Of a DNA stretch of 64,000 bases, positions 8,852-46,932 are shown piece after piece. The stretch covers positions 144,146 through 208,145 of the IMG/VR virus record IMGVR_UViG_3300020186_000013; one strand, given 5' to 3'. The notes beneath the pieces are model-generated. The model saw nothing but the letters and a program-made list of their open reading frames with translations. It did not search any database and was not told the origin of the DNA. A program made the position numbers and the translations under genes. Position 1 is the stretch's first letter. Each line of letters begins with the position of its first letter.

Positions 8852-10372
8852 TTACTCGGAGCTTCCCTGCCCCTGGACTTTTTGTTTCTTGTGCCTACGG
8901 GCCGTACTCAAAATCGACGGACCGAACTCACCAAGTCGGACACCGTTGAACGCCCGGTTGTCCCAGTACACATCGGCCATGACCTTGCCGCTGGAACCAG
9001 GAGGCTGGTCGGGGTTCTCGTTGATGTGGTCAAAGGGGATGCCATGCTCCTCCATCCACGTCTCGATCAACTTCGGGTTGTTGCGAACCGTGAAGATGAT
9101 AATCCGAACGCCCGCTTCGTGTAAGAGCTTCATCCACTTCTTCGCCCCGCGACGGGGCAGACCGATGAAGTCCGGGTCATGCGGCTGCTTCTCCTCGGCC
9201 AGCGTCCCGTCGAGGTCAACGGCCACCGAGAACCGGCGTTCCTTGTAGTCGGCAGCCGTCTTGTCGGCGTAGTGGTTGATGACCTTGACGGACGGATCAG
9301 ACCGCCACCGGGGAAGGTACGCCTTGTAGATCTGAGTGCCGACCTTGGCCTTGGCCACCCGCTGCTTCCGCCACTCAAGCTCGTCGAGGCCCATGGCCTT
9401 CGGGTTGTACTTGCTACTCGACCGGTCGCGGGTCAATCGCTGCTCGACGAGGCGATCAAGCGGCGTGTCGATGAGGTGCCGCTCGTGGGCCTTGCGCAAC
9501 TCAGGATCACCGTGCATGAGCTGCACGCCCTCAATGATCGACGGCACCTTGGCCTTCCGGATCGCATCCTCAACGAGCTTGCGGTTGTTCAAGCGACGCA
9601 TGGCGTTCTTCTCTTCGGGGTCGAGGTGAGACACCTCCATGCCCTTCCACTGCTTCCACAACGGGTGGGCGTCGAGTGATACATGAGGCATCTTGTTTTC
9701 GCCCGACAACTTCTTGGCGTAGGTCGTCTTGCCTGCCCCCGAGAAACCTGTGACGAGGATGTGCTTCAAAGCTGGCGGCAGCCCCTTCAGGTGCTTGAGC
9801 ACCTCCATACGCTTCGCGTTCGCTGCCACCAGCGTCGGACTCAGGCCGTCCTGCTTCGACATGGCCATGGCTTCGTCAATGTCGTAAAGTCCCACGCCCT
9901 TGCGGGACACCGGCTCAACCAGCTTGTTACCGTGGGGCTCGCCCAGATCGCCGACGAAGTAGTGCGTCCGGGAACCCCGGTAGGTCTTGGCCCGCTCGGC
10001 CTGCTTTTTTCCGCTGTAGGGCGGCGACCAGTCCAACTCGTGCGGGTCGAATGGAAGAGGTCGGGGGTTGTGGACGTGGTATCCGCTTTCTTCCGCGAAC
10101 TCGCGGACCGCAGCCGTCGCCGGGTCTTCACCAGGGTCGATGCCGCCACCGAACGTCAGGAAGTTGCCAGCGTCAGCGAGACCCCCGAAGATTTTGCCGT
10201 CCTTCATGGCAAACATCTCGGCACGATCGCGGTACGGCTTCGGGTTGCTTTCTTGCGTGACGCCAGGCAGACTGGTACTCAGAGCCGCCAACGCAGCCTT
10301 CGTCAGGCTGAGGCGGTCTTCCGGGACCCGTGGGGCCAGAATCCGCAAGATCGGATCTTCGGACTCAAACAT
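8852..10372 (-). CDS. Nudix hydrolase - P-loop kinase - HAD phosphatase triple fusion (C-terminal two-thirds is PNKP-like in architecture)
   Basis: Nudix box GGGIDPGEDPATAAVREFAEESG; Walker A GFSGAGKT; HAD motif I VAVDLDGTLA, FTVR, and ADVYWDNRA. Confidence 0.85.
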   Translation of the reverse strand: MFESEDPILRILAPRVPEDRLSLTKAALAALSTSLPGVTQESNPKPYRDRAEMFAMKDGKIFGGLADAGNFLTFGGGIDPGEDPATAAVREFAEESGYHVHNPRPLPFDPHELDWSPPYSGKKQAERAKTYRGSRTHYFVGDLGEPHGNKLVEPVSRKGVGLYDIDEAMAMSKQDGLSPTLVAANAKRMEVLKHLKGLPPALKHILVTGFSGAGKTTYAKKLSGENKMPHVSLDAHPLWKQWKGMEVSHLDPEEKNAMRRLNNRKLVEDAIRKAKVPSIIEGVQLMHGDPELRKAHERHLIDTPLDRLVEQRLTRDRSSSKYNPKAMGLDELEWRKQRVAKAKVGTQIYKAYLPRWRSDPSVKVINHYADKTAADYKERRFSVAVDLDGTLAEEKQPHDPDFIGLPRRGAKKWMKLLHEAGVRIIIFTVRNNPKLIETWMEEHGIPFDHINENPDQPPGSSGKVMADVYWDNRAFNGVRLGEFGPSILSTARRHKKQKVQGQGSSE

Positions 10373-21931: not shown

Positions 21932-22005
21932 ACCCACCGGCGGGACTCGAACCCGCATAATCCCGCTTAGAAGGCGGTCGCTCTACGCGATTGAGCTACG
22001 GGAGG
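21932..22005 (-). tRNA. tRNA-Arg(UCU)
   Basis: Cloverleaf: GCTC/GAGC D stem, anticodon loop CTTCTAA, T arm GCGGG-TTCGAGT-CCCGC; no encoded CCA. Confidence 0.9.
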
Positions 22006-22009
22006 ATAG

Positions 22010-22081
22010 TCGGGGTGGCAGGACTCGAACCTGCGACTTCATGGTTATGAGCCATGCGAGCTGCCTCTGCTCTACACCCCA
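22010..22081 (-). tRNA. tRNA-Met(CAU), initiator-like
   Basis: TGGGGTG/CACCCCG acceptor stem with U1.G72; GAGC/GCTC D stem (A11:U24); CATGG-CTCATAA-CCATG; GCAGG-TTCGAGT-CCTGC. Confidence 0.9.
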
Positions 22082-26906: not shown

Positions 26907-27269
26907 TCACTCCGGCTTCTTCGTGGGGTGGGGGTACGTCCGGGCGTGGATCTTGTCGGCCCAGTCGGCCGCATCCTTGCGGACATCGGGGTTGCGAGAC
27001 TTCCAGTCGCCTAGGTGCCCAATCCACAGGTGGTGAGTCGGGCACAGGGTGACGAAGTTGTCGCGTTCGAGTTCCTTGCTCGGGTCCCAGCTGACGGGCA
27101 TGACGTGGTGAACTTCGACGTTCTCGCGGTTGCCGCAGGCGGCACACCTCGGGTTGTCCTTCAACCAAGCCGCCCGGTACGACGGCCACTTGCCCGACCG
27201 GGCGACCAGCAACTCGATCTGGGGCCGCGTTGGTCCCAGGCCGACGACACGCAAGAGAAGTCCGATCAT
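26907..27269 (-). CDS. HNH endonuclease
   Basis: PRCAACG...VEVHHVMP...DNFVTLCPTHH. Confidence 0.9.
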   Translation of the reverse strand: MIGLLLRVVGLGPTRPQIELLVARSGKWPSYRAAWLKDNPRCAACGNRENVEVHHVMPVSWDPSKELERDNFVTLCPTHHLWIGHLGDWKSRNPDVRKDAADWADKIHARTYPHPTKKPE

Positions 27270-27680: not shown

Positions 27681-28853
27681 TCACTCGGGAACAGGTGGCC
27701 TCGGCCGAGGGAACACGTCGTTCTTCTCATGCGGCATCGGGGCCACCTCCACTTGCCTGAACTCAGCCTTCTTACCGGGGATGAGTCCACGCTTAATGGC
27801 TTCTTCCTCGCTGATCCGTTCGAGGCCACGCTTCTTCAGCTCCTCGTCGGACAGCTTCTCCAGCTCCTTCGGGTCGAGGGAGTTGGCGAGCGGCATCCGC
27901 ATTGCCTTCAGCATCCACTCCGCTTCACTCACCTTCTTGGTAGTGCCGTCGAGCAAGAATAGCAAGAACTGCCCGTCCCGCAAGGGCACGGCCAACCTCA
28001 CCTGGTGGAGGTCCTGGGCCTTGTATACCACACCGCCGTCAGACGCCCGACGGATACATATCGGCTCGCCCGTGGGATCGAAGCCCGAAGCGTTCATGAA
28101 CACGACCAGGGGGAAGTCGGTGTCCTTAATCAGGGCCTTGTACGGGGCAAGACGATCGGGCTGCTGAGCGTTGTCCTCGGCCGTGATGTAGGCGGCGGCG
28201 AGACCGTCGGCCGGGACCTCGGTGCCGTTGACGTAGGTGTACCGCACCAGGCCGTGCCGCTGGTCGAAGTCGACCGTGATCTTAGGCTCCTCCTCGAATG
28301 GCTGCACCTTCCAGGTGGCCATCGACGTCTGGCCGGAGATCTTGTCGTACAGCGGGGAGCCGAGACGTTTGTCCCGGAAGAAGAACGCCAGCAGGATAAT
28401 GACGGGCACGGACAACAACCACCGCAGCCAACGCGGCCACTTCTTGGGCTCGGGCAGGCCGAGTTCCTTGACCACTTCCTTCGCGGCCCCCGCGACCTCT
28501 TCGGGAGTCTTGGGGTTGTAATAGTTGGGCTTCTTCTTGTCGTCAGGCACGTCCGTGTCCTCCTCAAAGCTGGTTTCTACATCCCTGTACCGGCTCGCAA
28601 GCACCGAGACCACGCGGTCCGACCGGCCGAGGGCGATCACGACATCGTTGTACCCGAGAGCCCCCTGCACGGTCCCGATCTGGGCGTGGATCAGGTCCAG
28701 TTCAGCGTCCGACGGCGGCGGGTCGAGGAACGTCAACGCTGGACCGATCGACGGCCAGTCCTCGCGGCCCAACTCGAAAATGTCATACGGCAGACCGTTG
28801 ACGACTACCGAATAGCAGGTGATGACGATACGCCCGGCGATGCTGTCGTGCAT
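27681..28853 (-). CDS. Membrane-anchored hypothetical protein (possible internal GTG start near 28550)
   Basis: TM WLLSVPVIILLAFFF; strong internal GAGGAGG SD before VPDDKKK. Confidence 0.65.
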   Translation of the reverse strand: MHDSIAGRIVITCYSVVVNGLPYDIFELGREDWPSIGPALTFLDPPPSDAELDLIHAQIGTVQGALGYNDVVIALGRSDRVVSVLASRYRDVETSFEEDTDVPDDKKKPNYYNPKTPEEVAGAAKEVVKELGLPEPKKWPRWLRWLLSVPVIILLAFFFRDKRLGSPLYDKISGQTSMATWKVQPFEEEPKITVDFDQRHGLVRYTYVNGTEVPADGLAAAYITAEDNAQQPDRLAPYKALIKDTDFPLVVFMNASGFDPTGEPICIRRASDGGVVYKAQDLHQVRLAVPLRDGQFLLFLLDGTTKKVSEAEWMLKAMRMPLANSLDPKELEKLSDEELKKRGLERISEEEAIKRGLIPGKKAEFRQVEVAPMPHEKNDVFPRPRPPVPE

Positions 28854-29743
28854 TCGGCTAACTCCTTGCCGAGGGTCTCGCGAACTTCAATGTTCTTGGC
28901 CCACGCCGCCAGCAGGATGCGGGGATCGACCCCGAGCTTCCTCGCCTCGTGGATCAGGCTGTTGATGTCCTTGGGCAGACACGCACCGCCGAAGCCGAGT
29001 TCGCCGTCGTGGCCCGGCACGTCCCAGTGGGTGTCGCCCATCCGACTGTCAAGACACGCCACACTGATCGTCCGGGCGTAGTTGATCTGCGTCGCATCAC
29101 AGATCTGGCGGATCTCGTTGGCGAAGGCGACCTTGGTAGCGAAGAAGGCGTTGGTCGCCATCTTCACCATCTCCATGACCTTGGCCTCGTCGACGCAGAT
29201 GGCGGCAAACGGGAACGCCTTGGAGTAGATGGTCTTGGCCGTCCTCATTCCCTCATCGAGCATGCCGCCCAGAAGAACGTGCTTCTGGTCGAGGAACTCC
29301 TTGACAGCAGTCTTGGCCGAGGAAAACTCAGGGTTGAACACCACGTCCAAGTTGCGGTACTTGGCGTTCAGGGCGTCCGTCGTGCCCGGCGGCACGGTCG
29401 ACTTCAGGAGAACAGTGCGTCGTGCGGTCGGCAGGCTGTGGGCGTTCAACTGGGCACAGACCTTGTGCACGATCGACGTGTCACAGCTGCCGTCCGGGTT
29501 CATGGACGTCGGGACGCACACGAAGACCGGGCCGTGCCGCAGAACGGCCATCATGTCCCCGACCGACGGGAACTCAGACTTCGTGGGGTCGGTGTCGTAC
29601 CGATACAGGCGGTAGTGGCCGTAAAACCCCGCCGCCACCGCGTACCCAATGATGCCGTACCCAACGATACCGAGCATGGTGTGCCGCCGCTGAATCTCAT
29701 AAGTCGCGGAGAAGTCCTTCGTCCAGCCGGGGAAACTGTCCAC
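28805..29743 (-). CDS. ugd: UDP-glucose/GDP-mannose dehydrogenase family, short form lacking the C-terminal domain
   Basis: GIVGYGIIG, FVCVPT, KSTVPPGTT, FNPEF, EMVKMATNAFFATKVAFANEI, catalytic GFGGACLPKD. Confidence 0.9.
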   Translation of the reverse strand: MDSFPGWTKDFSATYEIQRRHTMLGIVGYGIIGYAVAAGFYGHYRLYRYDTDPTKSEFPSVGDMMAVLRHGPVFVCVPTSMNPDGSCDTSIVHKVCAQLNAHSLPTARRTVLLKSTVPPGTTDALNAKYRNLDVVFNPEFSSAKTAVKEFLDQKHVLLGGMLDEGMRTAKTIYSKAFPFAAICVDEAKVMEMVKMATNAFFATKVAFANEIRQICDATQINYARTISVACLDSRMGDTHWDVPGHDGELGFGGACLPKDINSLIHEARKLGVDPRILLAAWAKNIEVRETLGKELAECTTASPGVSSSPAIR

Positions 29744-29752
29744 GATGATCTC

Positions 29753-30157
29753 CTAGCTATCCGCCCGCAAGACGTTGAGGGCGTCTTCAATGTGAAACGC
29801 CGCCTGTTTCGACTTGGCGTCGGTCTGCTCCCGCGACCGTGTACGGTCGAGCAGGATGGCTAACAGGGCCTCGTCGGTGAGGCCGTGGGTGCCCTCAGAC
29901 CGGAACTCCAGCACCGTCTGGGACAGCGATTCATCCGAGCTCAAGTGGGACGGCTGGGCACACGGCTTGGGTGGGGTGTCAGGGCCGCTTGGCGGGGCGT
30001 CCGGGTTGCCCGGCTTGTCGTCGGTGCTGAGCCTGGGCACCGACACGCGATACGTGCCAGGCTGTAACGCCTCGACCGTGACGTGCTCGTTGTCACCGCG
30101 ACCAACGCGGTGAGTAGTGATCTCGCGGGCGAGCCAGCAGGCTTCGGGAGCGACCAT
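29753..30157 (-). CDS. Tad1/Acb2-like nucleotide-signal sponge candidate
   Basis: VLEF....THGLTDEALLAILLDR...AAFHIEDALNVL resembles, from memory, the Tad1 core HGVIDSDLLEIVRDR...ALTHVEEALMW. Confidence 0.5.
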   Translation of the reverse strand: MVAPEACWLAREITTHRVGRGDNEHVTVEALQPGTYRVSVPRLSTDDKPGNPDAPPSGPDTPPKPCAQPSHLSSDESLSQTVLEFRSEGTHGLTDEALLAILLDRTRSREQTDAKSKQAAFHIEDALNVLRADS

Positions 30158-30208
30158 GTTGTTCCTCCAGGGGTGACAGGTGGGCAGAGAAAAGGATACT
30201 CAACCCGG

Positions 30209-31012
30209 TCACGAACCGCCAGCCGGACGCTGCTGCGGCTGTCCCGGCTCTCCAGGGGCGTGGCAGTGGACAACGTCACCGGGCTTGAACAATTGCCAGA
30301 CGTAGCAGGGCCGCAGGCTGCCCACAAGGTACTGCTTGTACCAATCCCGCCAATGGATGCAATCGCCCTCGTGACCGGGGTACTGCAACATCGCCTCTCC
30401 CCCATTCTTCACCTTACGCTCGAACTGGGCATAGCTGCGGAGCGGGTAGTGGTGCATCTCCAATGCCGGACTCGTGACGACGTCGCCGGTAAGCCCCTCG
30501 ACGGCGTGCAACCCCTGGGCCACGTGGACGAACATCGACGGCCGGTGGATCACACGCGGGTGGTTGTCCTGGAGCACGCAGAACGGGAAGTCCTTCGGGT
30601 CGAACGGACCAACTCGGTCGGGCTCACCCTGCACGGGCTTGTGAATCCACGTCCGACCCCGGTCGAGGAAGACCGTAGACACGTTCGCGGGCACGGTCTC
30701 CAGGTAGGAGAGGTGCCCCCAGAACTCGTCGGCGTCCAGGTGCATGACCCAGTCGGGCTTGTACCTCTGGGCGATGTACTTCGCCAGCCCCGTGATCCAC
30801 TTCGACTGCTCGTAGGTGTGGTTGGGTTGATCGAACACGTCGAGGACATGGGGCCACTTCCACTGCAACTCGTCGAGCAACTCCCTGGTCCCGTCCGTGC
30901 TGCCGTTGTCCATGATGACGAAGCCGTCCACCCCGCGTTCGTGGTGGTGGCGGATATTGGCCTCGACGATCTCGACCTCGTCCCGGACGAGGAGGGTGGC
31001 GACGATCTTCAT
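30209..31012 (-). CDS. Glycosyltransferase GT2 (Glyco_tranf_2_4-like)
   Basis: VRDEVEIVEANIRHH...GVDGFVIMDNGSTDGT...DWVMHLDADEFW. Confidence 0.85.
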   Translation of the reverse strand: MKIVATLLVRDEVEIVEANIRHHHERGVDGFVIMDNGSTDGTRELLDELQWKWPHVLDVFDQPNHTYEQSKWITGLAKYIAQRYKPDWVMHLDADEFWGHLSYLETVPANVSTVFLDRGRTWIHKPVQGEPDRVGPFDPKDFPFCVLQDNHPRVIHRPSMFVHVAQGLHAVEGLTGDVVTSPALEMHHYPLRSYAQFERKVKNGGEAMLQYPGHEGDCIHWRDWYKQYLVGSLRPCYVWQLFKPGDVVHCHAPGEPGQPQQRPAGGS

Positions 31013-31341
31013 TGGTTCAGCTTGCCTTCTGGGCCGGGAGGCTTGTTGCAGTTTTCGAGTGCCGCCTTCAAAAAGTCGGCCGACGTCTTCTCGTTGTCGA
31101 CGATGCGGAACTGCTTCTTCACCTCGCAGAAGAACGCTTCGGCACTGGCCGTGTCGGACGCACCCAGGTGCATCCACTTCGCCTGCCACACCTTCCAGTC
31201 CAGAAAGAACGTGTGGATGAGAGCATGGGCCTCGAATGACGCCAATGTGAACTGCTGGTCGTGGTCGGCGTGCTTCGCCTTCGGGGGCATGTCCTTACCG
31301 GCGACCGGCGGGTACAAAGCGTACGGGTTCGTCGAACTCAC
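31009..31341 (-). CDS. Hypothetical protein (110 aa)
   Basis: Coding-like ORF coupled to both neighbours. Confidence 0.65.
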   Translation of the reverse strand: MSSTNPYALYPPVAGKDMPPKAKHADHDQQFTLASFEAHALIHTFFLDWKVWQAKWMHLGASDTASAEAFFCEVKKQFRIVDNEKTSADFLKAALENCNKPPGPEGKLNQ

Positions 31342-32243
31342 GTCGACTCCTTCGCAAGGCGTGCGACGCGGTCCCGCAGGTACTCGACCGAGTCGTGGAC
31401 GGTGAGGGTCTCCCAGCCCGGACAGCCAGGGCCGACGATCGCGGTCACCAGGAACGGATCAGACGTCATGCAGGCTCGTAGCATGAGCCGCTGCCACGGC
31501 CGGTCGTGGCTATCGAGGACGAGCTTCAGCTTGTAGTCCGGCACGGCCAGTCGCTTCTCGGCAGCACGAGCTTCGATCGCGACCTGTCGCAGGCCCTTCT
31601 TGTGCAGCTCCTTCATCCGCTCGAACGACTGCTGTTGCCGATTGGCGGGCAGACCGACGCCGAACCAGTTCTGCCGCACCTCGCCGAAGTGCGTCACGCG
31701 GAAACCGAGATCGACCCAACGGGCCTTGGGCCACTTCTCCAGGAACTCCACGTCGTAGTTGCCGGCGTGGGAGTGCCACGTGTCGAACATCGGCCAGCAC
31801 TGGCACGCCGGATCATTGGCGTTCCACATCTGGAAATACCCGTACGGCCACGGGTCGTGGTCGACAATCAGCTTGCCCTTCTCGTCATACCGGCGGGCAC
31901 CGGCGATCGTGCCGGGCTTGAAGTTCTTCTCGGCGATCTTCCGCCAGTTGGTCTGAGGCATGATGTCGGAGTCGAAGTGCAGGACGTGGGCGTGGGGGTC
32001 CATCGCGGCGTAGGCGACGTTAAGGGCGGCACCCTTGTTGAATGCGGCACCGAACTTGCCGAAGACGTCCGTGGTCACCACCCGGATTCGACGGTACTTA
32101 TTGCACACGTCGATGACGGTCTTATCCTCGGGCTTGGTCACCACCGTTAGGCTGTCGAGGGTGTCCATCCAGATCGGGAGGGACTGCCGCAGGTAGTTGG
32201 CGTAGACGGGGCCGACGCAACACGTGAAGGCATCAATTTCCAT
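31338..32243 (-). CDS. GT-A-fold glycosyltransferase
   Basis: FNKGAALNVAY...VLHFDSDIMP; PYGYFQMW; YDVEF. Confidence 0.75.
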   Translation of the reverse strand: MEIDAFTCCVGPVYANYLRQSLPIWMDTLDSLTVVTKPEDKTVIDVCNKYRRIRVVTTDVFGKFGAAFNKGAALNVAYAAMDPHAHVLHFDSDIMPQTNWRKIAEKNFKPGTIAGARRYDEKGKLIVDHDPWPYGYFQMWNANDPACQCWPMFDTWHSHAGNYDVEFLEKWPKARWVDLGFRVTHFGEVRQNWFGVGLPANRQQQSFERMKELHKKGLRQVAIEARAAEKRLAVPDYKLKLVLDSHDRPWQRLMLRACMTSDPFLVTAIVGPGCPGWETLTVHDSVEYLRDRVARLAKEST

Positions 32244-32925
32244 TGGGCTTCCTGGCAACGCAGTACAAGAAGTTTTCGTGCTCGACGACCTTCTTCATAA
32301 CGATCTTGACGTCCTCAAACCCCAACCGCGTCAGCACGTAGCGGAGGGAGTCGGCGGTGTAGAACCACAGGTGGTCGGGGTTCGTCAAGTCCGTATCGTC
32401 GGGCACGATAAGATACAGCGGACGGCCCGGTGCGAGCAACCGGTACATCTCTCGCAGGGCTCCCGGCGAGTCCGGCATATGCTCGGCGGCGTGAGCACAC
32501 AGCACCAACTGGGCCTGCCCGGTGGCTGCCGCCTCCAACTCCTCGAAGCACCGGTTCTCCATGTGCACGTGGTGGTTGTCCCGCATCCACTGAGCCGCCC
32601 ACGGGTCGGGCTCGAAGCCGACGTAGCTGTAGCCAAGCGACTTCAGGTGACTCACGTACGGGCTAACCCCCGTGCCGATCTCAACGGCCATGCCGCCGCC
32701 CGGCGGGGCGGGCGGCAGCTTACCGAGGGCACCCGTCAACTCTTCAAGGTACTTGCCCGGACAGAACGTCCCGTTGACCAGCGAACCCAAGCTCTCGTAA
32801 TACACCTGTCCCCCCGACGGGTGGTCCCGCCGGTACTGAACATGGTGGGCACACTTCTTCACCGACTTGGTCGCGTACCAAGTCGGGTCGGGAGTAGTGA
32901 CGCAGCCGCAGGGGTGCTTGGTCAT
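32233..32925 (-). CDS. Class I SAM-dependent methyltransferase with N-terminal Cys/His motif
   Basis: VEIGTGVS, YVGFEPD, LVLCAHAAEHMPDSPGALREMYRLLAPG..LYLIVPD. Confidence 0.85.
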   Translation of the reverse strand: MTKHPCGCVTTPDPTWYATKSVKKCAHHVQYRRDHPSGGQVYYESLGSLVNGTFCPGKYLEELTGALGKLPPAPPGGGMAVEIGTGVSPYVSHLKSLGYSYVGFEPDPWAAQWMRDNHHVHMENRCFEELEAAATGQAQLVLCAHAAEHMPDSPGALREMYRLLAPGRPLYLIVPDDTDLTNPDHLWFYTADSLRYVLTRLGFEDVKIVMKKVVEHENFLYCVARKPNGN

Positions 32926-33866
32926 TTGATTGCCGAGTTCTCGATGTAGTTCGTGACCAACTTCAACGTCTTCGCGGCCGGTGCCGTGTCGAGGGTGATG
33001 AGTTCCACCCGGCGGTTCTTGTCCTTGGGCTTGTAGATGCCCGCGTGGGTCTGGCTGACCTCCTCGAACTCGCCGTCGCAGGCCAGTTGCCCGAACCGTC
33101 GCAGAGGAACACCGCACCGGTGACAGTGAAACTTCACCTGCTTGGCAAACGCCTCGATGCTGGAACGCCACCACCCCTCCACGATCGGCACGCCCAGGTC
33201 GGGCCACTCAGGGTCATCGGCGTGCAACATCGCCTGGGCACCCATGATCTCGCACAGGTAACCCCGCAGGCCCCGGCCCGGCACGGCACAGATCATGGCC
33301 GACCAGTTCTGGTTGACGTCGCAGTTGGCGATCATCTCCCACCGCTTGCCCTCGTCGGGCTCGACGTCCATCATCGCCACGAACGGCGGCGAGTGCCGGG
33401 AGTCCGTGTCGTGGCCCTTGAGCTGCTTGCGACACTCCGGCCAGTCCCGGTAGAACTCGTCGTACGCAACCTGGTCCATGTGGACGTTCAGGTTGCTGAC
33501 CTCGGGGTTGAACGTGATGCGGGCAGCCTTGCCCTTCCCGAACAGCTTGTTGCACCACAGCCCGCACTGCTCCTGGGGGATGTGCTTGCGGAGGATGGTG
33601 CACAGCTCCTCGAACTTCGGGTGCATCGCCGGGTTGCCGCCGAAGATGCCCACGACCCCGAAGTAGTCCTTGAGGCTGACCACGGCCTGCTCGAACTCCT
33701 CGGTGGTGATGTAGACGTTCTTGCCGCCGAGGTTGCTCCCCTGCGTACAGCCGAAGCACTGCTTGTCGCAGGCACGGGTGATGTGGATCTGGAGGATGCC
33801 GTTACGCCAGCACTTCCGCTTCATGCTGGGCGTCACCATCTTCGCCAAGGCTTCCTGCTCGGTCAT
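32922..33866 (-). CDS. Radical SAM enzyme
   Basis: IHITRACDKQCFGC (CxxxCxxC); GIFGGNPAMHPKF; Cys-rich C-terminus (LCE...CHRCG). Confidence 0.85.
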   Translation of the reverse strand: MTEQEALAKMVTPSMKRKCWRNGILQIHITRACDKQCFGCTQGSNLGGKNVYITTEEFEQAVVSLKDYFGVVGIFGGNPAMHPKFEELCTILRKHIPQEQCGLWCNKLFGKGKAARITFNPEVSNLNVHMDQVAYDEFYRDWPECRKQLKGHDTDSRHSPPFVAMMDVEPDEGKRWEMIANCDVNQNWSAMICAVPGRGLRGYLCEIMGAQAMLHADDPEWPDLGVPIVEGWWRSSIEAFAKQVKFHCHRCGVPLRRFGQLACDGEFEEVSQTHAGIYKPKDKNRRVELITLDTAPAAKTLKLVTNYIENSAIK

Positions 33867-39991: not shown

Positions 39992-41269
39992 TTAGCCGAT
40001 CACAACAACGCGGTACTGGTTGGTCGTCGGTGCCACGGCGAACGTGACGTCGACGTTGTTGGCGTCCGTCACGACCCAGTCGGTGATCACGCCCGCACCG
40101 CCCGACACCGTGAACACCTGCACGATCACGTCCGTGGTGCCCAGTGCGTGGTTGACGGTGATCGTCGTGAGTGAGCCGTTGCCCACGCTGGCGGCGAACT
40201 TACCCGTGGCACCGAGGTTCGTGCGGGCACCGGCAGCCGTACCCGAGCCCGTGCCACCCCGAGTAACAGCGAGGTTGGCCTCACTCGACAGCGTGCCCGA
40301 GCCGTTGTTGATGACGACGTGGTCGGCCGTACCGTTGGCGATCTTGGTCCGAGCGATGGCTGCGGCCGTGGCGACCTCGGCGTTGGTCACGCCGAGGGCC
40401 TTGATGGAGAACGTGTTGCCCGTCAGCGTCAGCGAGACCTCGTCCGCGACGTAGGACGTGCCGGACGAGAACGTGATGAAGGTCAGCCCGTCCGTGCCCA
40501 CCACCGCCGAGCCGGTGTCGTTGGTGCAGACGAACGCCTTGTCGGCGTTGACCGTGCCCTTCTGGACCCAGAACGCGACCGACGCGGCGTCCGAGCCCGT
40601 GGGGAGGTCCGTCGCACGGGTCCAGGCACCCGCAGCGGCGACGTAGACGCCATCCTGCGACCCGGTCGACTGGCCGGTCGCCGCAACCCGCTCACCCGCC
40701 GAGACCGTGTAGCCGTCGATCGTGAGCAGGCCCGTGAGGGCGATGTTGGTCGTGGCGATGACGACGACGGGCTGGAGCCACTTGGTGCCGTTGATCAGGT
40801 TGTCGACATAGCTCTTGGTGACCGCGTCCGTGGCGTTGGTCACCGTGCCCGAGAGCGTCACACCCGACGAGCTGCCCGAGCCCGCGAAGGTGCCAATGCC
40901 CGCCGCGAAGTTGCCCGAACCGTCCCGGAGCACGATCGTCGAGGCCGTGTTCAAGGCGGTGGCGGCTGCGAGCTTGGTGAAGTCCGAGGACGACATGTAG
41001 CCGTTCTGGGAACCACTCGAAGCCTGCACCGTCAGGATCGGGGCGAGTGACGTGCCCGAGTTGGTGATCGGGGCCGTGACCGAGGTGCCCGTCGCCCAGA
41101 TGTCGTCGAGGCGGACCCAGCGGGAGCTGTTCCACAGGCGGAAGTAGCCGAGCACTGTGTCGTAGTAGATCTGGCCGACCACCGGCGAGCCGGGGGCCGA
41201 GGCCAGGTTCTGGACGCGAGCGTTTTGCAGCTCGTTCTGGTTCAGGTTGATGTTGTTGAGGAACAGCAT
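39992..41269 (-). CDS. Tail-fibre-like structural protein
   Basis: FLNNINLNQNELQNARVQNLASAPGSPVVGQIYYDT; DAVTKSYVD; ATTNIALTGLLTIDG; GVYVAAAGAWTRATD; ARTNLG. Confidence 0.7.
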   Translation of the reverse strand: MLFLNNINLNQNELQNARVQNLASAPGSPVVGQIYYDTVLGYFRLWNSSRWVRLDDIWATGTSVTAPITNSGTSLAPILTVQASSGSQNGYMSSSDFTKLAAATALNTASTIVLRDGSGNFAAGIGTFAGSGSSSGVTLSGTVTNATDAVTKSYVDNLINGTKWLQPVVVIATTNIALTGLLTIDGYTVSAGERVAATGQSTGSQDGVYVAAAGAWTRATDLPTGSDAASVAFWVQKGTVNADKAFVCTNDTGSAVVGTDGLTFITFSSGTSYVADEVSLTLTGNTFSIKALGVTNAEVATAAAIARTKIANGTADHVVINNGSGTLSSEANLAVTRGGTGSGTAAGARTNLGATGKFAASVGNGSLTTITVNHALGTTDVIVQVFTVSGGAGVITDWVVTDANNVDVTFAVAPTTNQYRVVVIG

Positions 41270-41656: not shown

Positions 41657-44600
41657 TTAGGAGTGGCCCTCGCCCGTCAGACCCTGAGCGGCTTGACGGG
41701 CTTTGTTAGTCTGGTGATGGAGTTCATCGCGTGCGGGTGCTTGACCGCCAGTGAGCTTGTTCCAAGCGTCGGAGATGGCTCCGGGGTTCTGCTGGATGCG
41801 GGGATAAGCCGCCAAGCCCGCACCACCCGCCATTATCAGCGGGTTACCAGTCAGCATCCCGAGCCCGCCGAGACCCATACCGCCCAACGCCATTCCCCGC
41901 TGCCCGCCCGTCATGTTCTCGGTGTCGTACCCCAGAGCTTTCAAGAACGGGTTACCGACGTTACCCACCCGCTGGCCGATCTGGTACCGGATCTCCTGGG
42001 TCGGGTCGAACTGGCCCTCCTCGTTGAGGAAGCCACGCTCGTGCATGTACTTGTCCGCGTCCCGTGCTATGTTCGCCTGCAACGTCGGGTAGTCCTGCTC
42101 GATGAAGGTCTTCTTCAGGTCGTTGATCTTGTTGTCGACGTCGCCGGCGACCTGGTCATGCAGAGAACCATAGGCCGTTCCGCCCAAAGCAGCAGCCCCC
42201 GTCCCGAGCGTCAACCCCTGCCCCGCCCGGAAGCCGAGCTTCCTGGCCCCGGACAAACCGGCGGCACCGCTCTGGTATGCACCTTTGCCCCACAGGAAGT
42301 GCCCGGCACGACTAAACGGGTCCATGACGCCCTGACCCATCCGCGTCATCGCGTTCGACGGAGCCTCCAGGGCGGTCGTGACACCCCGACTCAGCATGCT
42401 AGGTTCCACGGGCGTCGTCCCCGCCGCTCGTGCCGCTGCGTTCGTCCGAACCAAAGACGAGTTGCGTGCAGCAGCGACGTTGCCCCCCAGGCCAGTCATC
42501 AAACCGGCTCGACTCAGGCGACGGCTCCACTTCTCAGGGTCGTTCGGGTCACCGTTACCTGTCATGTCGCCGAGCTGGTCCATGCCGAACCCGATATTGG
42601 TCCCGGCAAACGACTGAGCCAACGGACGCCACAGCGTCTGACCCGTCGCCGAGTTGCGGAATCCTCGGTTGCCCATCAACGCACCGCCGGCAATGCCCAG
42701 CGGATTGATCCTCCAACTTCGCCAGCCGCCCTCGGGTTGGCCAGTGGCCGGGTCAATCCCCGGACTACCAAGGGTGAAACTACCCTCCCCGCCGCCCATC
42801 GCGTTGGCCGTCATGTTGCCTTGCAAGCCACCGAAGGTCATCTGCATGCCACTACCGGACATGTTCGCCCGCGTTCGACCGGCGGCAGTCGCCGCACGGG
42901 GGAGCGTGGCAGCCTCGGTGATGTTGAGACCCGAGTTGTCTTTACCGTGTGTTGCCGGACGCGGAGACACGATCTTCGGACCCATACCCGGCGTCGGAGC
43001 ACCCCGTGTGCCGGTCCGCATCAAGGGCTTGGTCGACGACGCACCAGGACGGACCAGTCCGCCCAGCCACTTCGCACCCGACACCAGGGTCTCCTTGCTG
43101 GGCCAGACGGCGTCCTTCTCGAACGCCTGCTTCTGCCCGAACATGCTGCCTAGGCCCTGGGCCATCTGCTGCCCGCCCATCATCGACCAACCCGACGGGG
43201 CGTACTGCGACGCCAGCTGCTGAGCCGACCCGGCAGCCTGCTCATTGGCCACCTCGGACGTTGCCTTCATCGACTTCGGACCGGTGATGGACATCGGCGG
43301 CGGGGCCAGCGACGCCGCCCCGGTATTCTTGTTGACGCTGACCTCACCCATCCCCTGCGGGTGTGTCGCCTGAGCCACCTGGGTCTTCTGACTCACCTGA
43401 TTCTTGCCCGTCGGCAGCGTACCGGGGGACGGAGCGGTCGGTGCGGTCTTGGGCTTCTCCTGCTTGCCGCCCACCATCTTGTCGAAGCTGTCGAGGAACG
43501 CGAGCTTCTTGAGGCCGGCAGCAAGCTCAGCGTGCACCTGAAGGCCGTAGTTGGTCCCGACCCGGTCCACGGCGGACTTGATCTGCGACAGACCGAGGCC
43601 CTTCTGACGACAGTGGTCAAAGAACGACTCGGCGAACGGCGTCATGTCCATGCCGCCTTTGTCGAACCCAGGTAGTCGCGGCCCGGTGTACGGGACCGGA
43701 GGAACAGGTTGTTGCTGCCCGAAGTTGGCAGGCAGACGCGACCCGGTGTACGGGACCGGAGGAACAGGTTGTTGCTGCCCGAAGTTGGCAGGCAGACGCG
43801 ACCCGGTATACGCCGGCACAACGTGCTGTGGCACCGGCTTAGCCTGGGGCATCGGCTGGGCCTGCGGTTGTGGCTGGGCCTGCGGTTGTGGCTGCTGGGC
43901 GGCGTTGGTGACCGGTGCCGCTAACTGCGGAGCAATGTTGCCGACGACGCCAGCCGTTTCAGATGGAGGGGCTTGCGTGGGATCGGCCAGAGCGTTCTGA
44001 ATTTGGCTAGAAAGTTGCCCGCCCAGGGTGAACTTGTTGACGTATCCGAGCCCACGGTATAAGGGGTACTTCTCTTCGTTCTGCTGAGCGTTGTACGCGG
44101 CATTGCCGATCGCGTACGGCAATTTGTTGCTCACATCATCAATGTTGGTCGGGTTCGACTTCGCCAGGGCCATCGCCCCACCAGCCCCCAAAAGTCCAGC
44201 ACCGGTAACACCCGCAGCCTGGGTCACTCCACCCATGGTCTTGTCGAAGCCCTTGAGACCATACCCGACAGCCTGTTGCCCTCGACCGAGAACGGCCCGC
44301 CCGCCACCCTGAGCCACGTTCGCGGCACCACGGGTAAGCATGCTGTTCTGGATCGGCTGAGTGAACGGCCGAGTCAGGGGCGTCGACAGGGTGTTCTTTA
44401 CGGTCTTGACGGCCTGCACAAGCGGGTGAGCCAAGCGGTTGGTGTCGAGAGCGTGGACGCCTCGGCTCAACATCGACACACCAGGGACGCCATCCATCAT
44501 GCCCGGCAACTGGTGGGTCTGGGCCAACTGCTCCTTGGTCGCCCCCGCCGCAACCCGAGACTGCATATCGGCCCGGTTCATGAGAGGCTTGACAGTCCGG

Positions 44601-46924
44601 GAGTCGAACAGCTTGGTGCCTTGGAGCTTGCCGCCCTGGCCGTAGCCGCCCATGGTCTTGGCAAACCCGGCTGCCCCGCGTCCCATTAAGCCGCCAACAC
44701 CACGAACAAGGGCACCAAAGTACGCTCGTTTCTCAAGGTCCTTCCGCTGACAGTGGTCGAAGAACGCTTTAGCGGCTGGAGTCATATCACTTCCCCCCTT
44801 GGCGAGTCCCGGCACTGTCGGCACGTGTGGTCGGATGAACCCAGGAACTTCCTGTCGGGCCGCGTCCTGTTGCTGTTGAAGCCGCTGCACCGCCCCTTGG
44901 CGAGCGTCGTCGATCGCCTTGTTGCCTGCTTGCTGCACGGAGTCGGCAGTCTCGTTGCCTACCTGTCGAGCGGAATTGGCCCACGCCTGCCCGCTCGTCG
45001 TGCGACCTAGCATTTGGTTGATGATCACCTGCTTGGCCACGGACTGCTTGGCCGCTTCTTGTTGCTGCCGAATACGCTGCATCGCTTCCTGCCGAGCAGT
45101 GTCGAGAGCCTCGCCACCCGCCTGCTGTGCGGACGAGGCCAGCGTCTGTACGCTCTTCTGAGCTATCCTCCCCTGTTCCTGGGCCATCAGCCGAGACGCC
45201 TCCTGGGCCGACATCCCTCCGCTCACCCTCTGAGCCCACGCCTTCGCAGCCGGGTGCGACATAGCCCCAGCAGCTTCCGGCGACTCGGCCACAGCCTTGA
45301 GGTTGAATTTCGGCTGAGCCGCAGCCAAACGAGGGTACAGGTTGGCTGCGGCGGTCATCTTGGCCGCGTCTTGCGGCGACTTCCAGGTCGACCAATTCAG
45401 CATGTCGGACACGGCGGGCACGTCGAGGGCACCCTGCACCCTGTTGCTTTTCATCGCAGCAGCCACCAGCGGCTCAGCCCTGGCGGCGTTGTTGTCCCCG
45501 ATCGCGTTGCCGAGGTGCGTGCGAACCGAGCGGTTCTGGAGCTCCTGCAACGCCTCGGGCGGGTAGTATTCGTGGCCGGTCCTCGTCGGCAGGCCGTGCT
45601 CATGGAACTGATTCTTCGAGAACGTCTGCGATCGGGCGATCGGGCTAACAGCCCGGAGCAGCCGCTGGCCCGTCGGGCTGTTGACGTTGGCCTCATAGTT
45701 CTGCTGGAGGGCTGGCAGCCGCTTGCGGACTTCCTCCTCCATGATCTGCTCGGTCGGGGCCGGCGTATAGTCGGCAAGGTTGCGGATCACCCCCTGCATG
45801 ATGTTGCCGCCCGCCGTGAAGTTGCCGATCCGCTTCATCACGTTGTTGACCGGGTTCTCGTTCGCCTGCACCATGCTGTTGTGGGCGGCGTTGCCGACGG
45901 TATACGGGAAGTTCCGCTTCCCCGCAGCCCGACCAACCTCGGCAATGTCGGACTTGTCCGTCAAGCTGTCCCATATCGCGGGGAGCGGATTGTCCCGTAA
46001 CTTGGCAATCTCGCCGTTCGGGTCCACCGTGTTGTACGGGTCAACGGCTCTCGTGAACCTCTGGAGGTTGTTAGCCGGGGCGTGCCACAAGGCATTCACC
46101 CCGCTGCCGAGGGCCACGCCCGCACCACCGAAGCCGACGATCTTGGTCGCAGCCCCGAGAGCCTTGTCGGCCCCCATGAGACCGTACCCGCCCGCCTGCT
46201 GTGCCCGACCCAGGATCGCCTTGCCTCCACCCTGGGCCACGTTCGTAGCACCACGGGCGAGCAGATTGTTCTGGATCGGGGTCGTGAGTGGGCGAGTTAA
46301 GGGCGTACCCAGCAGGTTCTTGGTCACGTTGGCCGCGTGCATGAACGGGTGCGTGAACCGGTTGCGGTCGAGGTAATTGAGAGCCTTGTTGGTCACCCCA
46401 ACACCAGGGATGCGGGACCAATTGCCTGGTAGCTCATGGGTCGCAGCGAGTTGCTCGCGAGTCTGCCCCGCCGCCAAGCGGGCGTTCATCCCCGGTCGAC
46501 GCAGGAACGGCTTCACCGTCGTCGAGTTGAACATGGTCTCGCCACGGAGGTTGCCCCCCTGACCAAAACCAGCGAGGTCCCGCACGTACGCCTTGCCGCC
46601 GTGGACCTGGGCGTCGCCCACGGCCTTCGCACCCGACCGGGCCACCTGGTTGACCTTGTCCGCCGCCTGGAAGGGTGCCTTCACCACGGCCTTGGTGCCC
46701 TGCCCGAACATCCGGGCCGCAGGACGGCCAATGCCGTTGAACAGGCCCACAGCACCACGGCCAAGGGCACCGAAGACGGCCTCCTTCTCCAGCCCCTCAT
46801 TCAGCTCGGCGTACACCTGCTCGCCGAAACGAAGGCCCACGCCGTCAACAGCCTCTTTGATCTGTTGCGGCGTGAGTCCCTTGTCACGGCAGCGGGCGAA
46901 GAATGCCTCGGCAAACGGCGTCAT
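41657..46924 (-). CDS. 1756-aa modular Gly/Ala/Gln-rich K-x-A polyprotein (putative virion internal/ejection protein)
   Basis: GAGG SD before ATG 46924; three MTP-leader modules; internal duplication of ~200 aa; many GxxxG helices. Confidence 0.75.
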   Translation of the reverse strand: MTPFAEAFFARCRDKGLTPQQIKEAVDGVGLRFGEQVYAELNEGLEKEAVFGALGRGAVGLFNGIGRPAARMFGQGTKAVVKAPFQAADKVNQVARSGAKAVGDAQVHGGKAYVRDLAGFGQGGNLRGETMFNSTTVKPFLRRPGMNARLAAGQTREQLAATHELPGNWSRIPGVGVTNKALNYLDRNRFTHPFMHAANVTKNLLGTPLTRPLTTPIQNNLLARGATNVAQGGGKAILGRAQQAGGYGLMGADKALGAATKIVGFGGAGVALGSGVNALWHAPANNLQRFTRAVDPYNTVDPNGEIAKLRDNPLPAIWDSLTDKSDIAEVGRAAGKRNFPYTVGNAAHNSMVQANENPVNNVMKRIGNFTAGGNIMQGVIRNLADYTPAPTEQIMEEEVRKRLPALQQNYEANVNSPTGQRLLRAVSPIARSQTFSKNQFHEHGLPTRTGHEYYPPEALQELQNRSVRTHLGNAIGDNNAARAEPLVAAAMKSNRVQGALDVPAVSDMLNWSTWKSPQDAAKMTAAANLYPRLAAAQPKFNLKAVAESPEAAGAMSHPAAKAWAQRVSGGMSAQEASRLMAQEQGRIAQKSVQTLASSAQQAGGEALDTARQEAMQRIRQQQEAAKQSVAKQVIINQMLGRTTSGQAWANSARQVGNETADSVQQAGNKAIDDARQGAVQRLQQQQDAARQEVPGFIRPHVPTVPGLAKGGSDMTPAAKAFFDHCQRKDLEKRAYFGALVRGVGGLMGRGAAGFAKTMGGYGQGGKLQGTKLFDSRTVKPLMNRADMQSRVAAGATKEQLAQTHQLPGMMDGVPGVSMLSRGVHALDTNRLAHPLVQAVKTVKNTLSTPLTRPFTQPIQNSMLTRGAANVAQGGGRAVLGRGQQAVGYGLKGFDKTMGGVTQAAGVTGAGLLGAGGAMALAKSNPTNIDDVSNKLPYAIGNAAYNAQQNEEKYPLYRGLGYVNKFTLGGQLSSQIQNALADPTQAPPSETAGVVGNIAPQLAAPVTNAAQQPQPQAQPQPQAQPMPQAKPVPQHVVPAYTGSRLPANFGQQQPVPPVPYTGSRLPANFGQQQPVPPVPYTGPRLPGFDKGGMDMTPFAESFFDHCRQKGLGLSQIKSAVDRVGTNYGLQVHAELAAGLKKLAFLDSFDKMVGGKQEKPKTAPTAPSPGTLPTGKNQVSQKTQVAQATHPQGMGEVSVNKNTGAASLAPPPMSITGPKSMKATSEVANEQAAGSAQQLASQYAPSGWSMMGGQQMAQGLGSMFGQKQAFEKDAVWPSKETLVSGAKWLGGLVRPGASSTKPLMRTGTRGAPTPGMGPKIVSPRPATHGKDNSGLNITEAATLPRAATAAGRTRANMSGSGMQMTFGGLQGNMTANAMGGGEGSFTLGSPGIDPATGQPEGGWRSWRINPLGIAGGALMGNRGFRNSATGQTLWRPLAQSFAGTNIGFGMDQLGDMTGNGDPNDPEKWSRRLSRAGLMTGLGGNVAAARNSSLVRTNAAARAAGTTPVEPSMLSRGVTTALEAPSNAMTRMGQGVMDPFSRAGHFLWGKGAYQSGAAGLSGARKLGFRAGQGLTLGTGAAALGGTAYGSLHDQVAGDVDNKINDLKKTFIEQDYPTLQANIARDADKYMHERGFLNEEGQFDPTQEIRYQIGQRVGNVGNPFLKALGYDTENMTGGQRGMALGGMGLGGLGMLTGNPLIMAGGAGLAAYPRIQQNPGAISDAWNKLTGGQAPARDELHHQTNKARQAAQGLTGEGHS
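43682..43812. repeat. In-frame 60-bp tandem repeat (two identical copies plus a partial) encoding YTGSRLPANFGQQQPVPPVP
   Basis: Lines 43681 and 43741 are identical after their first base. Confidence 0.95.
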
Positions 46925-46932
46925 GTCCGTCC

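What the first reader, a model, noticed from the sequence alone, without database searches (positions are those of the whole stretch)
29753..30157. Tad1/Acb2-like signal-sponge candidate hidden in the glycosylation region
Seen: TVLEFRSEGTHGLTDEALLAILLDR...AAFHIEDALNVL. From memory, the anti-Thoeris protein Tad1 has TIKFQ...HGVIDSDLLEIVRDR...ALTHVEEALMWM. This copy has a Pro-rich insertion and appears C-terminally shorter. Inference: it sequesters gcADPR or cyclic oligonucleotide immune signals, possibly with shifted specificity.
Basis: partly seen in the sequence, partly recalled or inferred. Interest (0 to 1): 0.6.

Follow-up and report, generated by a model that had tools for sequence, protein, structure and literature searches.

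The report
Tad1 homolog missing its signal pocket
A small gene in a 208-kb microbial-mat phage is a genuine but very diverged relative of the anti-Thoeris sponge Tad1 that keeps the dimer-forming core and has lost nearly every residue and loop Tad1 uses to trap immune signals, so it is probably not a conventional sponge.

Summary
The ORF is real: window 29753-30157 on the minus strand, 134 aa, with a strong RBS. The quoted motif is there. Pfam, PHROGs and an exhaustive phmmer search left it almost an orphan. A profile search then found full-length relatives (27-34% identity). Their profile matches solved Tad1 structures at E~1e-26. P0001 matches that profile, built without it, at hhalign probability 98% (E 2.4e-13). 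Tad1-family homology is therefore supported. Acb2 membership is not.

The sponge inference is not supported. Of the 11 CbTad1 residues that contact gcADPR, nine are conserved in 13-15 of the 15 closest relatives. P0001 keeps one (R78 = R105). All four pocket loops are shortened, degenerate or truncated away, including R109, R113 and the lid. TAG is a normal stop in this genome, so the truncation is real.

The loss is selective. P0001 keeps 21 of 24 conserved scaffold columns but only 2 of 22 conserved pocket-loop columns. A homodimer through beta4 and the helices is still predicted (0.59 vs best control 0.16).

Best reading: a Tad1-derived dimeric scaffold that no longer binds gcADPR or cyclic dinucleotides the known way, either repurposed or inactivated. 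New variant of a known kind; moderate interest.

The parts
29753..30157 (-). Whole ORF (134 aa plus TAG stop): a diverged, C-terminally truncated Tad1-family protein (P0001)
   Evidence: ORF list and translation. The identical protein is called as a gene on 13 contigs from several microbial-mat samples. hhalign probability 98% to the Tad1-family profile.
30163..30168 (-). Shine-Dalgarno GGAGGA, 5 nt upstream of the ATG at 30157
   Evidence: Read directly from the sequence.
30038..30130 (-). aa 10-40: N-terminal beta-sheet scaffold (REITTH motif, beta1-beta3). The beta2-beta3 pocket loop (GGAxH, carrying the H29 equivalent) is deleted.
   Evidence: Alignment A3. HMM domain 1 covers aa 11-32. 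AF2 strands at 11-17, 25-32 and 35-39. Column count.
29918..30037 (-). aa 41-80: Pro/Ser/Asp-rich insertion in the beta3-beta4 loop, predicted disordered
   Evidence: Gap in all close relatives except the shorter inserts of P0030, P0036 and P0044. pLDDT below 50 for aa 63-82.
29885..29917 (-). aa 81-91: beta4 (VLEF) followed by a beta4-alpha1 loop shortened by 6 residues. The G55 and R57 equivalents are gone.
   Evidence: Alignments; column count; part of the predicted dimer interface.
29756..29884 (-). aa 92-134: two-helix hairpin (GLTDEALLAILLDR ... HIEDALNVL). The alpha1-alpha2 loop is degenerate and 3 residues shorter, and the protein ends where the R109 position would be (D133).
   Evidence: HMM domain 2 covers aa 87-131. 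AF2 helices 95-108 and 114-133 with pLDDT 79-94. Superposes on Tad1 hairpins at 1.1-1.2 A over 41-46 residues.
29680..29721 (-). Possible, statistically unsupported relic of the lost Tad1 tail in the +1 frame (RRTSPRLMRFSGGT), inside the 5' end of the next ORF
   Evidence: HMM score -5.1 bits, E~1-2. A post-hoc regex has 3 hits in six frames of 208 kb, one of them here. A lead only.

Best explanation
The gene encodes a highly diverged member of the Tad1 (Thoeris anti-defence 1) family. It preserves the family's structural scaffold: the N-terminal beta-strands with the REITTH motif, beta4, and the two long helices that pack into a four-helix bundle in the Tad1 homodimer. It has lost the ligand pocket. 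[quoted passage not shown] Here the first two loops are deleted, the alpha1-alpha2 loop is shortened and replaced, and the tail with its lid is cut off by a genuine stop codon. About 40 disordered Pro-rich residues are inserted in the beta3-beta4 loop. I therefore conclude that it still forms a Tad1-like dimer but does not sequester gcADPR or cyclic di-/trinucleotides by the known Tad1 mechanism. The losses are concentrated in the pocket and the scaffold is conserved, so I think it more likely (about 45%) that the protein is still used and has been repurposed. In that case a different partner or ligand would bind at the remodelled dimer ends, which carry a basic alpha1-alpha2 loop and the Pro-rich insert. 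The alternatives are an inert relic of a disabled sponge (about 35%) and a sponge for one of the known signals (about 10-15%). Shown: the gene, the homology, the residue losses and the real truncation. Predicted in silico: the fold and the dimer. Inferred: loss of canonical binding and the present role.
For: - Gene: intact ORF with a GGAGGA RBS. It is called identically on 13 contigs.
- Homology: full-length relatives found by profile search and aligned. Their profile matches Tad1 structures 7uav and 8kb* at E 9e-27. P0001 against the profile built without it gives hhalign probability 98%, E 2.4e-13, and 39.5 bits by hmmsearch.
- Pocket definition: taken from Leavitt 2022 and Li 2023.
- Pocket loss: P0001 keeps only the R78 equivalent. 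H29, G55, R57, N92, R113, G120 and N122 are gaps or absent, and F82>R, F87>A, R109>D, while 13-15 of 15 relatives keep nine of these positions.
- Selective loss: 21 of 24 scaffold columns kept against 2 of 22 pocket-loop columns, Fisher p 1.2e-7 (2.6e-5 without the tail).
- Real truncation: TAG ends 39 of 171 long ORFs, there is no suppressor tRNA, and the HMM finds no tail on read-through with X at the stop.
- Fold: AF2 gives a confident hairpin, and the top 11 Foldseek hits are all Tad1 chains.
- Dimer: homodimer score 0.59 against a best control of 0.16. That mark was reached by 20 of 30 proteins solved as pairs and 1 of 23 solved as single chains. Runs agree in at least 37% of contacts and partner pLDDT is at least 54. 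The interface (residues 79-85, 91-106, 115-132) matches the Tad1 beta4 seam plus helix bundle.
Against: - No binding was measured, and the absence of the known contact residues does not prove absence of binding. Sponge families are functionally plastic (Hadary 2025).
- The alpha1-alpha2 loop of P0001 is rich in Arg and Lys and could contact phosphates.
- The structural match alone is not significant (Foldseek E~0.6, VIA Z 5.2-5.4 among generic helical hairpins).
- The dimer prediction may reflect the model's memory of solved Tad1 dimers, and it used my own alignment.
- The scaffold-versus-loop statistic counts columns, and single indel events remove several columns at once.
- There are no diverged orthologs and almost no population variation (99.9-100% DNA identity), so purifying selection on this gene could not be tested.
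Confidence: 0.7

Rival explanations
1. One reading: it is an active Tad1-like sponge that sequesters gcADPR or cyclic oligonucleotides, possibly with shifted specificity, using a remodelled pocket.
For: True Tad1-family homology. A predicted Tad1-like homodimer, which is where the pockets form. Tad1, Tad2 and Acb2 homologs show varied specificities. Basic residues lie in the alpha1-alpha2 loop (sequence).
Against: Only 1 of 11 contact residues is kept, while relatives keep 6-8 of 8 conserved contact columns. R109A/R113A and F82A/N92A each severely reduced gcADPR and 2',3'-cGAMP binding in CbTad1, and all four positions are lost here, as is the lid at 116-122. The trinucleotide residues R90/T97 are K (or A, depending on gap placement) and F. 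All four pocket loops are shortened, degenerate or missing.
Confidence: 0.12
2. It is an inert relic: a Tad1 sponge gene disabled by truncation and loop deletions and not yet purged from a large phage genome. Selection against sponge activity by sponge-sensing defences such as Panoptes could have driven this.
For: Orphan status: no close homolog in the exhaustive search or in viral contigs. The functional tail is lost. There is a faint possible tail remnant out of frame just downstream. Sponge activity can be lethal to phage in Panoptes hosts. In 62.5% GC DNA, long open frames are common, so an intact ORF is weak evidence.
Against: Decay should hit scaffold and loops alike, but 21 of 24 scaffold columns are kept against 2 of 22 loop columns. 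The gene has a strong RBS and tight operon packing. A self-association interface is still predicted.
Confidence: 0.3
3. It is a structural or packaged virion protein that uses the Tad1 fold, like the PhiKZ inner-capsid protein gp184.
For: The family profile matches PhiKZ gp184 (PDB 8y6v_I) at E 3e-20. gp184 is a minor capsid protein of the vertex-binding complex. This phage is also jumbo-sized at 208 kb.
Against: The gene lies in a sugar-modification cluster, not next to recognisable head genes; the nearest head-decoration-like gene is about 10 kb away. gp184 is 230 aa, with the Tad1-like part at its C-terminus, and is proteolytically processed. P0001 has none of that architecture.
Confidence: 0.05
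4. The resemblance to Tad1 is a chance match of a short helical motif in a spurious high-GC ORF.
For: Pfam shows no hit. The structural match alone is insignificant.
Against: Two separate segments (REITTH... and GLTDEALLAILLDR...HIEDAL) match in the right order. hhalign gives probability 98%, E 2.4e-13. The RBS is strong.
Confidence: 0.02

Closest known systems
Tad1 (Thoeris anti-defence 1; CbTad1 PDB 7UAV/7UAW/8SMD/8KBE-H, CmTad1 8KBB-D)
   Same: Homologous over both the N-terminal beta-sheet region (REITTH, beta2, beta3, beta4) and the alpha1-alpha2 hairpin. The invariant D-R of alpha1 (R78 equivalent) is kept. A predicted homodimer uses beta4 and both helices. Phage-encoded and small.
   Different: Lacks H29, G55, R57, F82, F87, N92, R109, R113, G120 and N122 and the lid at 116-122. 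Three pocket loops are shortened and the tail is truncated. A disordered insert of about 40 aa sits in the beta3-beta4 loop. It lies inside a sugar-modification operon, not among small early accessory genes as its relatives do.
Closest intact metagenomic relatives (P0005, P0028, P0029, P0030, P0036, P0044; 118-138 aa, carrying PF24729)
   Same: 27-34% identity over about 90% of the protein, and 31-44% over the aligned columns of A3. Same N-terminal REITTH start and same core. Some (P0030, P0036, P0044) also carry inserts in the beta3-beta4 loop.
   Different: All keep 6-8 of 8 conserved contact columns and the RT..R..RGVEGT tail. The P0005 model matches Tad1 at Foldseek E 6e-7, against about 0.6 for P0001.
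Pseudomonas phage OBP OBP_060 / PHROG 2428
   Same: Shares the hairpin core (43% identity over aa 82-124). It was the only hit in annotated phages and belongs to the only PHROG that P0001 touches.
   Different: OBP_060 keeps the N92, R109 and R113 equivalents and the full tail. Its N-terminal part differs.
Acb2 (anti-CBASS 2)
   Same: Pfam unites part of Acb2 and Tad1 in one domain family, PF24729 Acb2_Tad1_hairpin, and P0001 has a two-helix hairpin.
   Different: PF24729 does not hit P0001. No Acb2 chain matches the family profile at E<=1. P0001 has the Tad1-type beta-sheet N-terminus.
PhiKZ gp184 (minor inner capsid protein, PDB 8Y6V chain I)
   Same: Contains a Tad1-family domain (E 3e-20 to profile A3). 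From a jumbo phage.
   Different: 230 aa, virion-associated and proteolytically processed. There is no evidence that P0001 is structural.

Membership tests
Tad1 | Sequence/profile homology spanning the N-terminal beta-sheet and the C-terminal two helices | tested here: met
   hhalign probability 98%, E 2.4e-13, aa 10-131 against the profile of 15 relatives. hmmsearch 39.5 bits. That family profile matches Tad1 PDB chains at E 9e-27.
Tad1 | Fold: four-stranded antiparallel sheet plus two long helices | tested here: inconclusive
   AF2 gives three strands and two helices, beta4 is not modelled, mean pLDDT 66. The top 11 Foldseek hits are Tad1 chains but at E~0.6. VIA Z 5.2-5.4 among generic hairpins. 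The control relative P0005 gives E 6e-7.
Tad1 | Head-to-tail homodimer through the beta4 seam and a four-helix bundle | tested here: met
   In silico only. Score 0.59 against a best control of 0.16. The mark was reached by 20 of 30 proteins solved as pairs and 1 of 23 solved as single chains. Contact agreement at least 37%, partner pLDDT at least 54. Interface at residues 79-85, 91-106 and 115-132. It may reflect likeness to solved Tad1 dimers.
Tad1 | gcADPR/cyclic-dinucleotide pocket residues (CbTad1 H29, G55, R57, R78, F82, F87, N92, R109, R113, G120, N122) | tested here: not met
   Only the R78 equivalent (R105) is kept. The others are gaps, absent or substituted (F82>R, F87>A, R109>D), while nine are conserved in 13-15 of 15 relatives.
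Tad1 | C-terminal tail forming the ordered lid (residues 116-122) | tested here: not met
   The protein ends at the position equivalent to CbTad1 V110 (numbering). 35 residues follow the core, against 51-52 in canonical members. TAG is a real stop. No tail is found on read-through.
Tad1 | Cyclic-trinucleotide site (CbTad1 R90, T97) | tested here: not met
   K (or A, depending on gap placement) and F at these positions. The positions are also variable among the 15 relatives, so this is not family-defining.
Tad1 | Hexamer (trimer of dimers) | not tested
The CmTad1 interface residues Q98/E99/M102/W103/K106 map to E124/D125/N128/V129/A132 by my own offset from the numbering, so the interface is only partly kept.
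Tad1 | Binds and sequesters immune nucleotides; inhibits Thoeris or CBASS | not testable with these tools
   Needs biochemistry and phage challenge.
Acb2 | Match to the Acb2_Tad1_hairpin model (PF24729) or to Acb2 structures | tested here: not met
   No Pfam hit at E<=10. No six-frame hit in the genome. No Acb2 chain at E<=1 with the family profile.
PhiKZ gp184-like minor capsid proteins | About 230-aa protein with a C-terminal Tad1-like domain, encoded with or used in the virion | tested here: inconclusive
   P0001 is 134 aa and lies in a sugar-modification cluster. No virion data are available.

The most novel reading that the evidence does not exclude
A Tad1 scaffold kept under selection after its nucleotide pocket was removed. 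That would be a sponge fold repurposed to bind something new at the remodelled dimer ends: an as yet unknown immune signal, a nucleotide-sugar (given the flanking GT2 and UDP-glucose-dehydrogenase genes), or a protein. The loss of the old pocket may have been driven by sponge-sensing defences such as Panoptes.
Probability: 0.25. Interest if true: 0.6.

Novelty: new variant of a known kind. Interest (0 to 1): 0.35.

Why it matters
Tad1 homologs are usually annotated and counted as anti-Thoeris/anti-CBASS sponges on homology alone. This case shows a family member whose scaffold is intact but whose binding apparatus is almost completely gone, so homology-based calls of 'sponge' can be wrong. If the protein is functional, it would be an example of a sponge fold evolving a non-sponge or new-ligand role. 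If it is a relic, it may record selection against sponge activity, which is now plausible because Panoptes-type systems punish nucleotide sequestration. Either outcome can be tested with simple binding and co-expression assays, using an intact relative as the control.

Tried and rejected
- **Pfam:** hmmscan of the whole protein and of aa 70-134 gave nothing relevant. A six-frame search of the phage genome with PF24729 gave nothing at E<=10.
- **Direct PDB search:** phmmer of P0001 against PDB gave only a chance Adnectin hit.
- **Homolog searches with P0001 alone:** the word search and the exhaustive phmmer search over 1.8 billion representatives found only the protein itself plus weak hits, two of them to the Pro-rich part. 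The third, P0005 (E 5e-4), later proved to be a true relative.
- **Related loci:** The search for related loci with P0001 and with the neighbouring UDP-glucose dehydrogenase found no related phage, so there was no synteny or ortholog comparison.
- **Hidden tail:** TAG read-through or a frameshift hiding the tail is rejected. TAG is a common stop, there is no suppressor tRNA, and the next gene has its own RBS and GTG.
- **Out-of-frame tail-like peptide:** it is not significant and the pattern was defined after the fact. Kept only as a lead.
- **dN/dS:** population copies are 99.9-100% identical over 2.4-8.4 kb, so there is no information.
- **RNA evidence:** none of the holder runs is RNA.
- **VIA-align wide search:** dominated by generic helical hairpins.
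- **Hadary 2025 supplements:** a look-up for the JGI scaffold names found nothing in the held text, which may be incomplete.
- **gp184 alignment:** a PDB search with P0035, meant to display the gp184 alignment, returned only CmTad1.
- **A second, intact Tad1 gene in the genome:** none found.

Full report
**1. Observation**

The stated coordinates hold a real ORF on the minus strand: window 29753-30157, 134 aa, kept as P0001. The ATG at 30157 is preceded by GGAGGA with a 5-nt spacer. The TAG stop is followed at once by GGAG, 6 nt and the GTG of the next gene. Its remembered Tad1 motif agrees with the CbTad1 chain that HMMER printed.

The window is the last 64 kb of a 208,145-bp IMG/VR virus record estimated 93% complete. 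The genome is 62.5% GC and recurs in microbial-mat metagenomes. The neighbours on the same strand are:
- a GT2 glycosyltransferase (30209-31189);
- a UDP-glucose/GDP-mannose dehydrogenase-like gene (28805-29743);
- a methyltransferase (32233-33207);
- a radical-SAM protein (32922-33866);
- an HNH endonuclease (26907-27269).

So the 'glycosylation region' description is right.

**2. Finding the family**

Direct searches nearly failed:
- Pfam gave nothing.
- PHROG 2428 matched weakly, E 2.7e-4 on aa 87-131.
- The PDB gave nothing.
- The word search and the exhaustive phmmer search returned only the protein itself plus weak hits.

tblastn against annotated phages gave one weak hit, OBP_060 of Pseudomonas phage OBP. 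OBP_060 is a solid PHROG 2428 member and matches solved Tad1 structures at E 2e-8.

A profile built from P0001 plus OBP_060 relatives then retrieved 57 proteins. Several align with about 90% of P0001 at 27-34% identity and carry PF24729, which is Acb2_Tad1_hairpin. Aligned with P0001 (A3), they show a clear family consensus: REITTH, DEPGxGGAxHxY, IxFQxGP, GVNGLTNEALLAIVxDRL, FQxGxFACxENAxAL, and RTxxRxARGVEGT.

The family profile matches CbTad1 and CmTad1 chains at E about 1e-26 over nearly their full length. To avoid circularity I rebuilt the profile without P0001 (A4):
- hhalign gives probability 98%, E 2.4e-13, over aa 10-131.
- hmmsearch gives 39.5 bits in two collinear pieces, aa 11-32 and 87-131.
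- BLASTP against P0005 gives E 8e-13 for the single comparison.

P0001 is therefore a true, very diverged Tad1-family member. No Acb2 chain matched the family profile at E<=1, so it is Tad1-type, not Acb2-type.

**3. Structure**

AF2 with the 16-row alignment gave mean pLDDT 66. The two helices (95-108, 114-133) are confident at 79-94. Three N-terminal strands are modelled at moderate confidence, and aa 63-90 is disordered.

The top 11 Foldseek PDB hits are all Tad1 chains, with the hairpin at 1.1-1.2 A over 41-46 residues, but E is only about 0.6. The Foldseek-independent search gives Tad1 at Z 5.2-5.4 among many generic helical hairpins. Structure alone is therefore not decisive.

As a control, the intact relative P0005 was folded with an alignment of the same depth. 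It gave pLDDT 79.8 with beta1-beta4 plus two helices, and it hit Tad1 at E 6e-7, probability 1.00.

**4. Does it have the Tad1 pocket?**

Leavitt et al. (bioRxiv 10.1101/2022.05.03.490397) describe two pockets per dimer. [quoted passage not shown] Eleven residues contact gcADPR: H29, G55, R57, R78, F82, F87, N92, R109, R113, G120 and N122. Residues 116-122 form a lid.

Li et al. (bioRxiv 10.1101/2023.11.15.567273) add three points:
- Cyclic dinucleotides use the same pocket.
- R109A/R113A and F82A/N92A each severely reduce binding of gcADPR and 2',3'-cGAMP.
- Cyclic trinucleotides bind at R90/T97 in the hexamer.

I mapped these positions onto alignment A3. Nine of the eleven are conserved in 13-15 of the 15 closest relatives. 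P0001 keeps only R78 (its R105).

| CbTad1 position | State in P0001 |
|---|---|
| H29, G55, R57, N92, R113, G120, N122 | alignment gap, or beyond the C-terminus |
| F82 | R |
| F87 | A |
| R109 | D |
| R90 (trinucleotide site) | K, or A with the other gap placement |
| T97 (trinucleotide site) | F |

Every relative keeps 6-8 of the 8 strongly conserved contact columns; P0001 keeps 1. P0001 has 35 residues after the GLTxEALL core, where canonical members have 51-52.

The truncation is not an artefact:
- TAG terminates 39 of 171 long ORFs.
- The four tRNAs include no suppressor.
- Reading through with X at the stop gives no HMM extension.

**5. Pattern of loss**

Forty-six columns are conserved in at least 12 of the 15 relatives. 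P0001 keeps 21 of the 24 that lie in strands and helices, but only 2 of the 22 that lie in the four pocket loops:

| Pocket loop | Conserved columns kept |
|---|---|
| beta2-beta3 | 2 of 6 |
| beta4-alpha1 | 0 of 3 |
| alpha1-alpha2 | 0 of 4 |
| C-terminal tail | 0 of 9 |

Fisher p is 1.2e-7, or 2.6e-5 if the tail is left out. One caveat applies: a single deletion removes several columns, so events are fewer than columns. Counted as roughly 10 events in the loops against 3 in the scaffold, the skew remains but is much weaker.

Uniform decay of a dead gene would not spare the scaffold this way. A homodimer test passed, with score 0.59 against a best control of 0.16. That mark was reached by 20 of 30 proteins solved as pairs and 1 of 23 solved as single chains. 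The runs agree in at least 37% of contacts, and partner pLDDT is at least 54. The interface uses beta4, alpha1 and alpha2, as in the Tad1 dimer. Because Tad1 dimers are solved, this shows likeness, not proof that this copy binds itself.

**6. Interpretation**

What is shown: a real gene, Tad1-family homology, near-complete loss of the known ligand-contact residues, and a real C-terminal truncation. What is predicted: a retained hairpin and sheet scaffold, and a homodimer. What is inferred: the protein does not trap gcADPR or cyclic oligonucleotides by the Tad1 mechanism.

For its present role I weigh the options as follows:
- **Repurposed scaffold, about 45%.** This is favoured by the selective conservation, the strong RBS and the operon packing.
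- **Inert relic of a disabled sponge, about 35%.** This is favoured by orphan status, the lost tail and a faint possible tail remnant out of frame. Panoptes-type defences are triggered by sponge activity (PMC13712596), which gives a selective reason to lose the pocket.
- **Still a sponge for a known signal, about 10-15%.**
- **Virion protein like PhiKZ gp184, about 5%**.

No other Tad1-like gene exists in this genome.

The closest intact relatives sit among small accessory genes next to integrase, resolvase or DnaB-type genes, not in sugar clusters. P0001's position between a GT2 gene and a UDP-glucose dehydrogenase-like gene is therefore unusual. That alone shows no functional link.

**7. Limits**

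- There are no diverged orthologs.
- There is almost no population variation.
- There are no RNA runs.
- The host is unknown.

**8. Verdict**

This is a new variant of a known kind, of moderate interest (0.35).

Noticed in passing
PDB 8y6v chain I (PhiKZ gp184); not in the window: PhiKZ minor inner-capsid protein gp184 (230 aa) carries a full Tad1-family domain at aa 106-227 (E 3e-20 to the family profile). The capsid paper does not mention this in the passages read. A packaged Tad1-like protein in a nucleus-forming jumbo phage may be worth a look.
   Followed up: partly
L002:2905-3231 (+), Pseudomonas phage OBP gene OBP_060: Annotated 'hypothetical protein', but it matches Tad1 structures at E 2e-8 and keeps the N92, R109 and R113 equivalents and the tail. 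It is likely a bona fide Tad1-type sponge. PHROG 2428 ('unknown function') appears to be a Tad1-like family.
   Followed up: partly
P0050 (318 aa, metagenomic): Carries both PF24729 (Acb2_Tad1_hairpin) and PF11195 (the Tad2 family according to Hadary 2025). This is an apparent natural fusion of two sponge domains.
   Followed up: no
window 29680-29721 (-), +1 frame relative to the ORF: The peptide RRTSPRLMRFSGGT resembles the lost family tail RTxxRxxRGVEGT. It is not significant by HMM (E~1-2), and the post-hoc regex is rare in the genome (3 hits in six frames). It could be a remnant of the tail displaced by an indel, or chance in Arg-rich off-frame sequence.
   Followed up: partly
window 28805-29743 (-): The UDP-glucose/GDP-mannose dehydrogenase homolog is only 312 aa. 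It matches the N-terminal and central Pfam domains but shows no C-terminal (UDP-binding) domain hit. Its GTG start adds about 22 residues before the Rossmann GxGxxG motif.
   Followed up: no
window 30209-33866 (-) and 8852-10372 (-): A sugar- or modification-type cluster: radical SAM, SAM methyltransferase, two unassigned ORFs, GT2, then the Tad1-like gene and the dehydrogenase. Further away is a 506-aa protein with matches to PHROGs annotated as phosphoheptose isomerase and polynucleotide kinase/ATPase. The target of the modification (DNA, virion or host surface) is unknown.
   Followed up: no
window 21932-22081 (-) (genome 166077-166226): Adjacent tRNA-Arg(TCT) and tRNA-Met(CAT) genes. The genome has four tRNAs in all, including a second Arg(TCT) reported by ARAGORN as 98 nt, which is unusually long.
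   Followed up: no
window 41657-46936 (-) and 46933-49122 (-): Very large ORFs (1759 aa and 729 aa) with no PHROG match at E<=1e-5, next to a head-decoration-like gene at 39992-41269. Most large proteins of this phage have no recognisable family.
   Followed up: no
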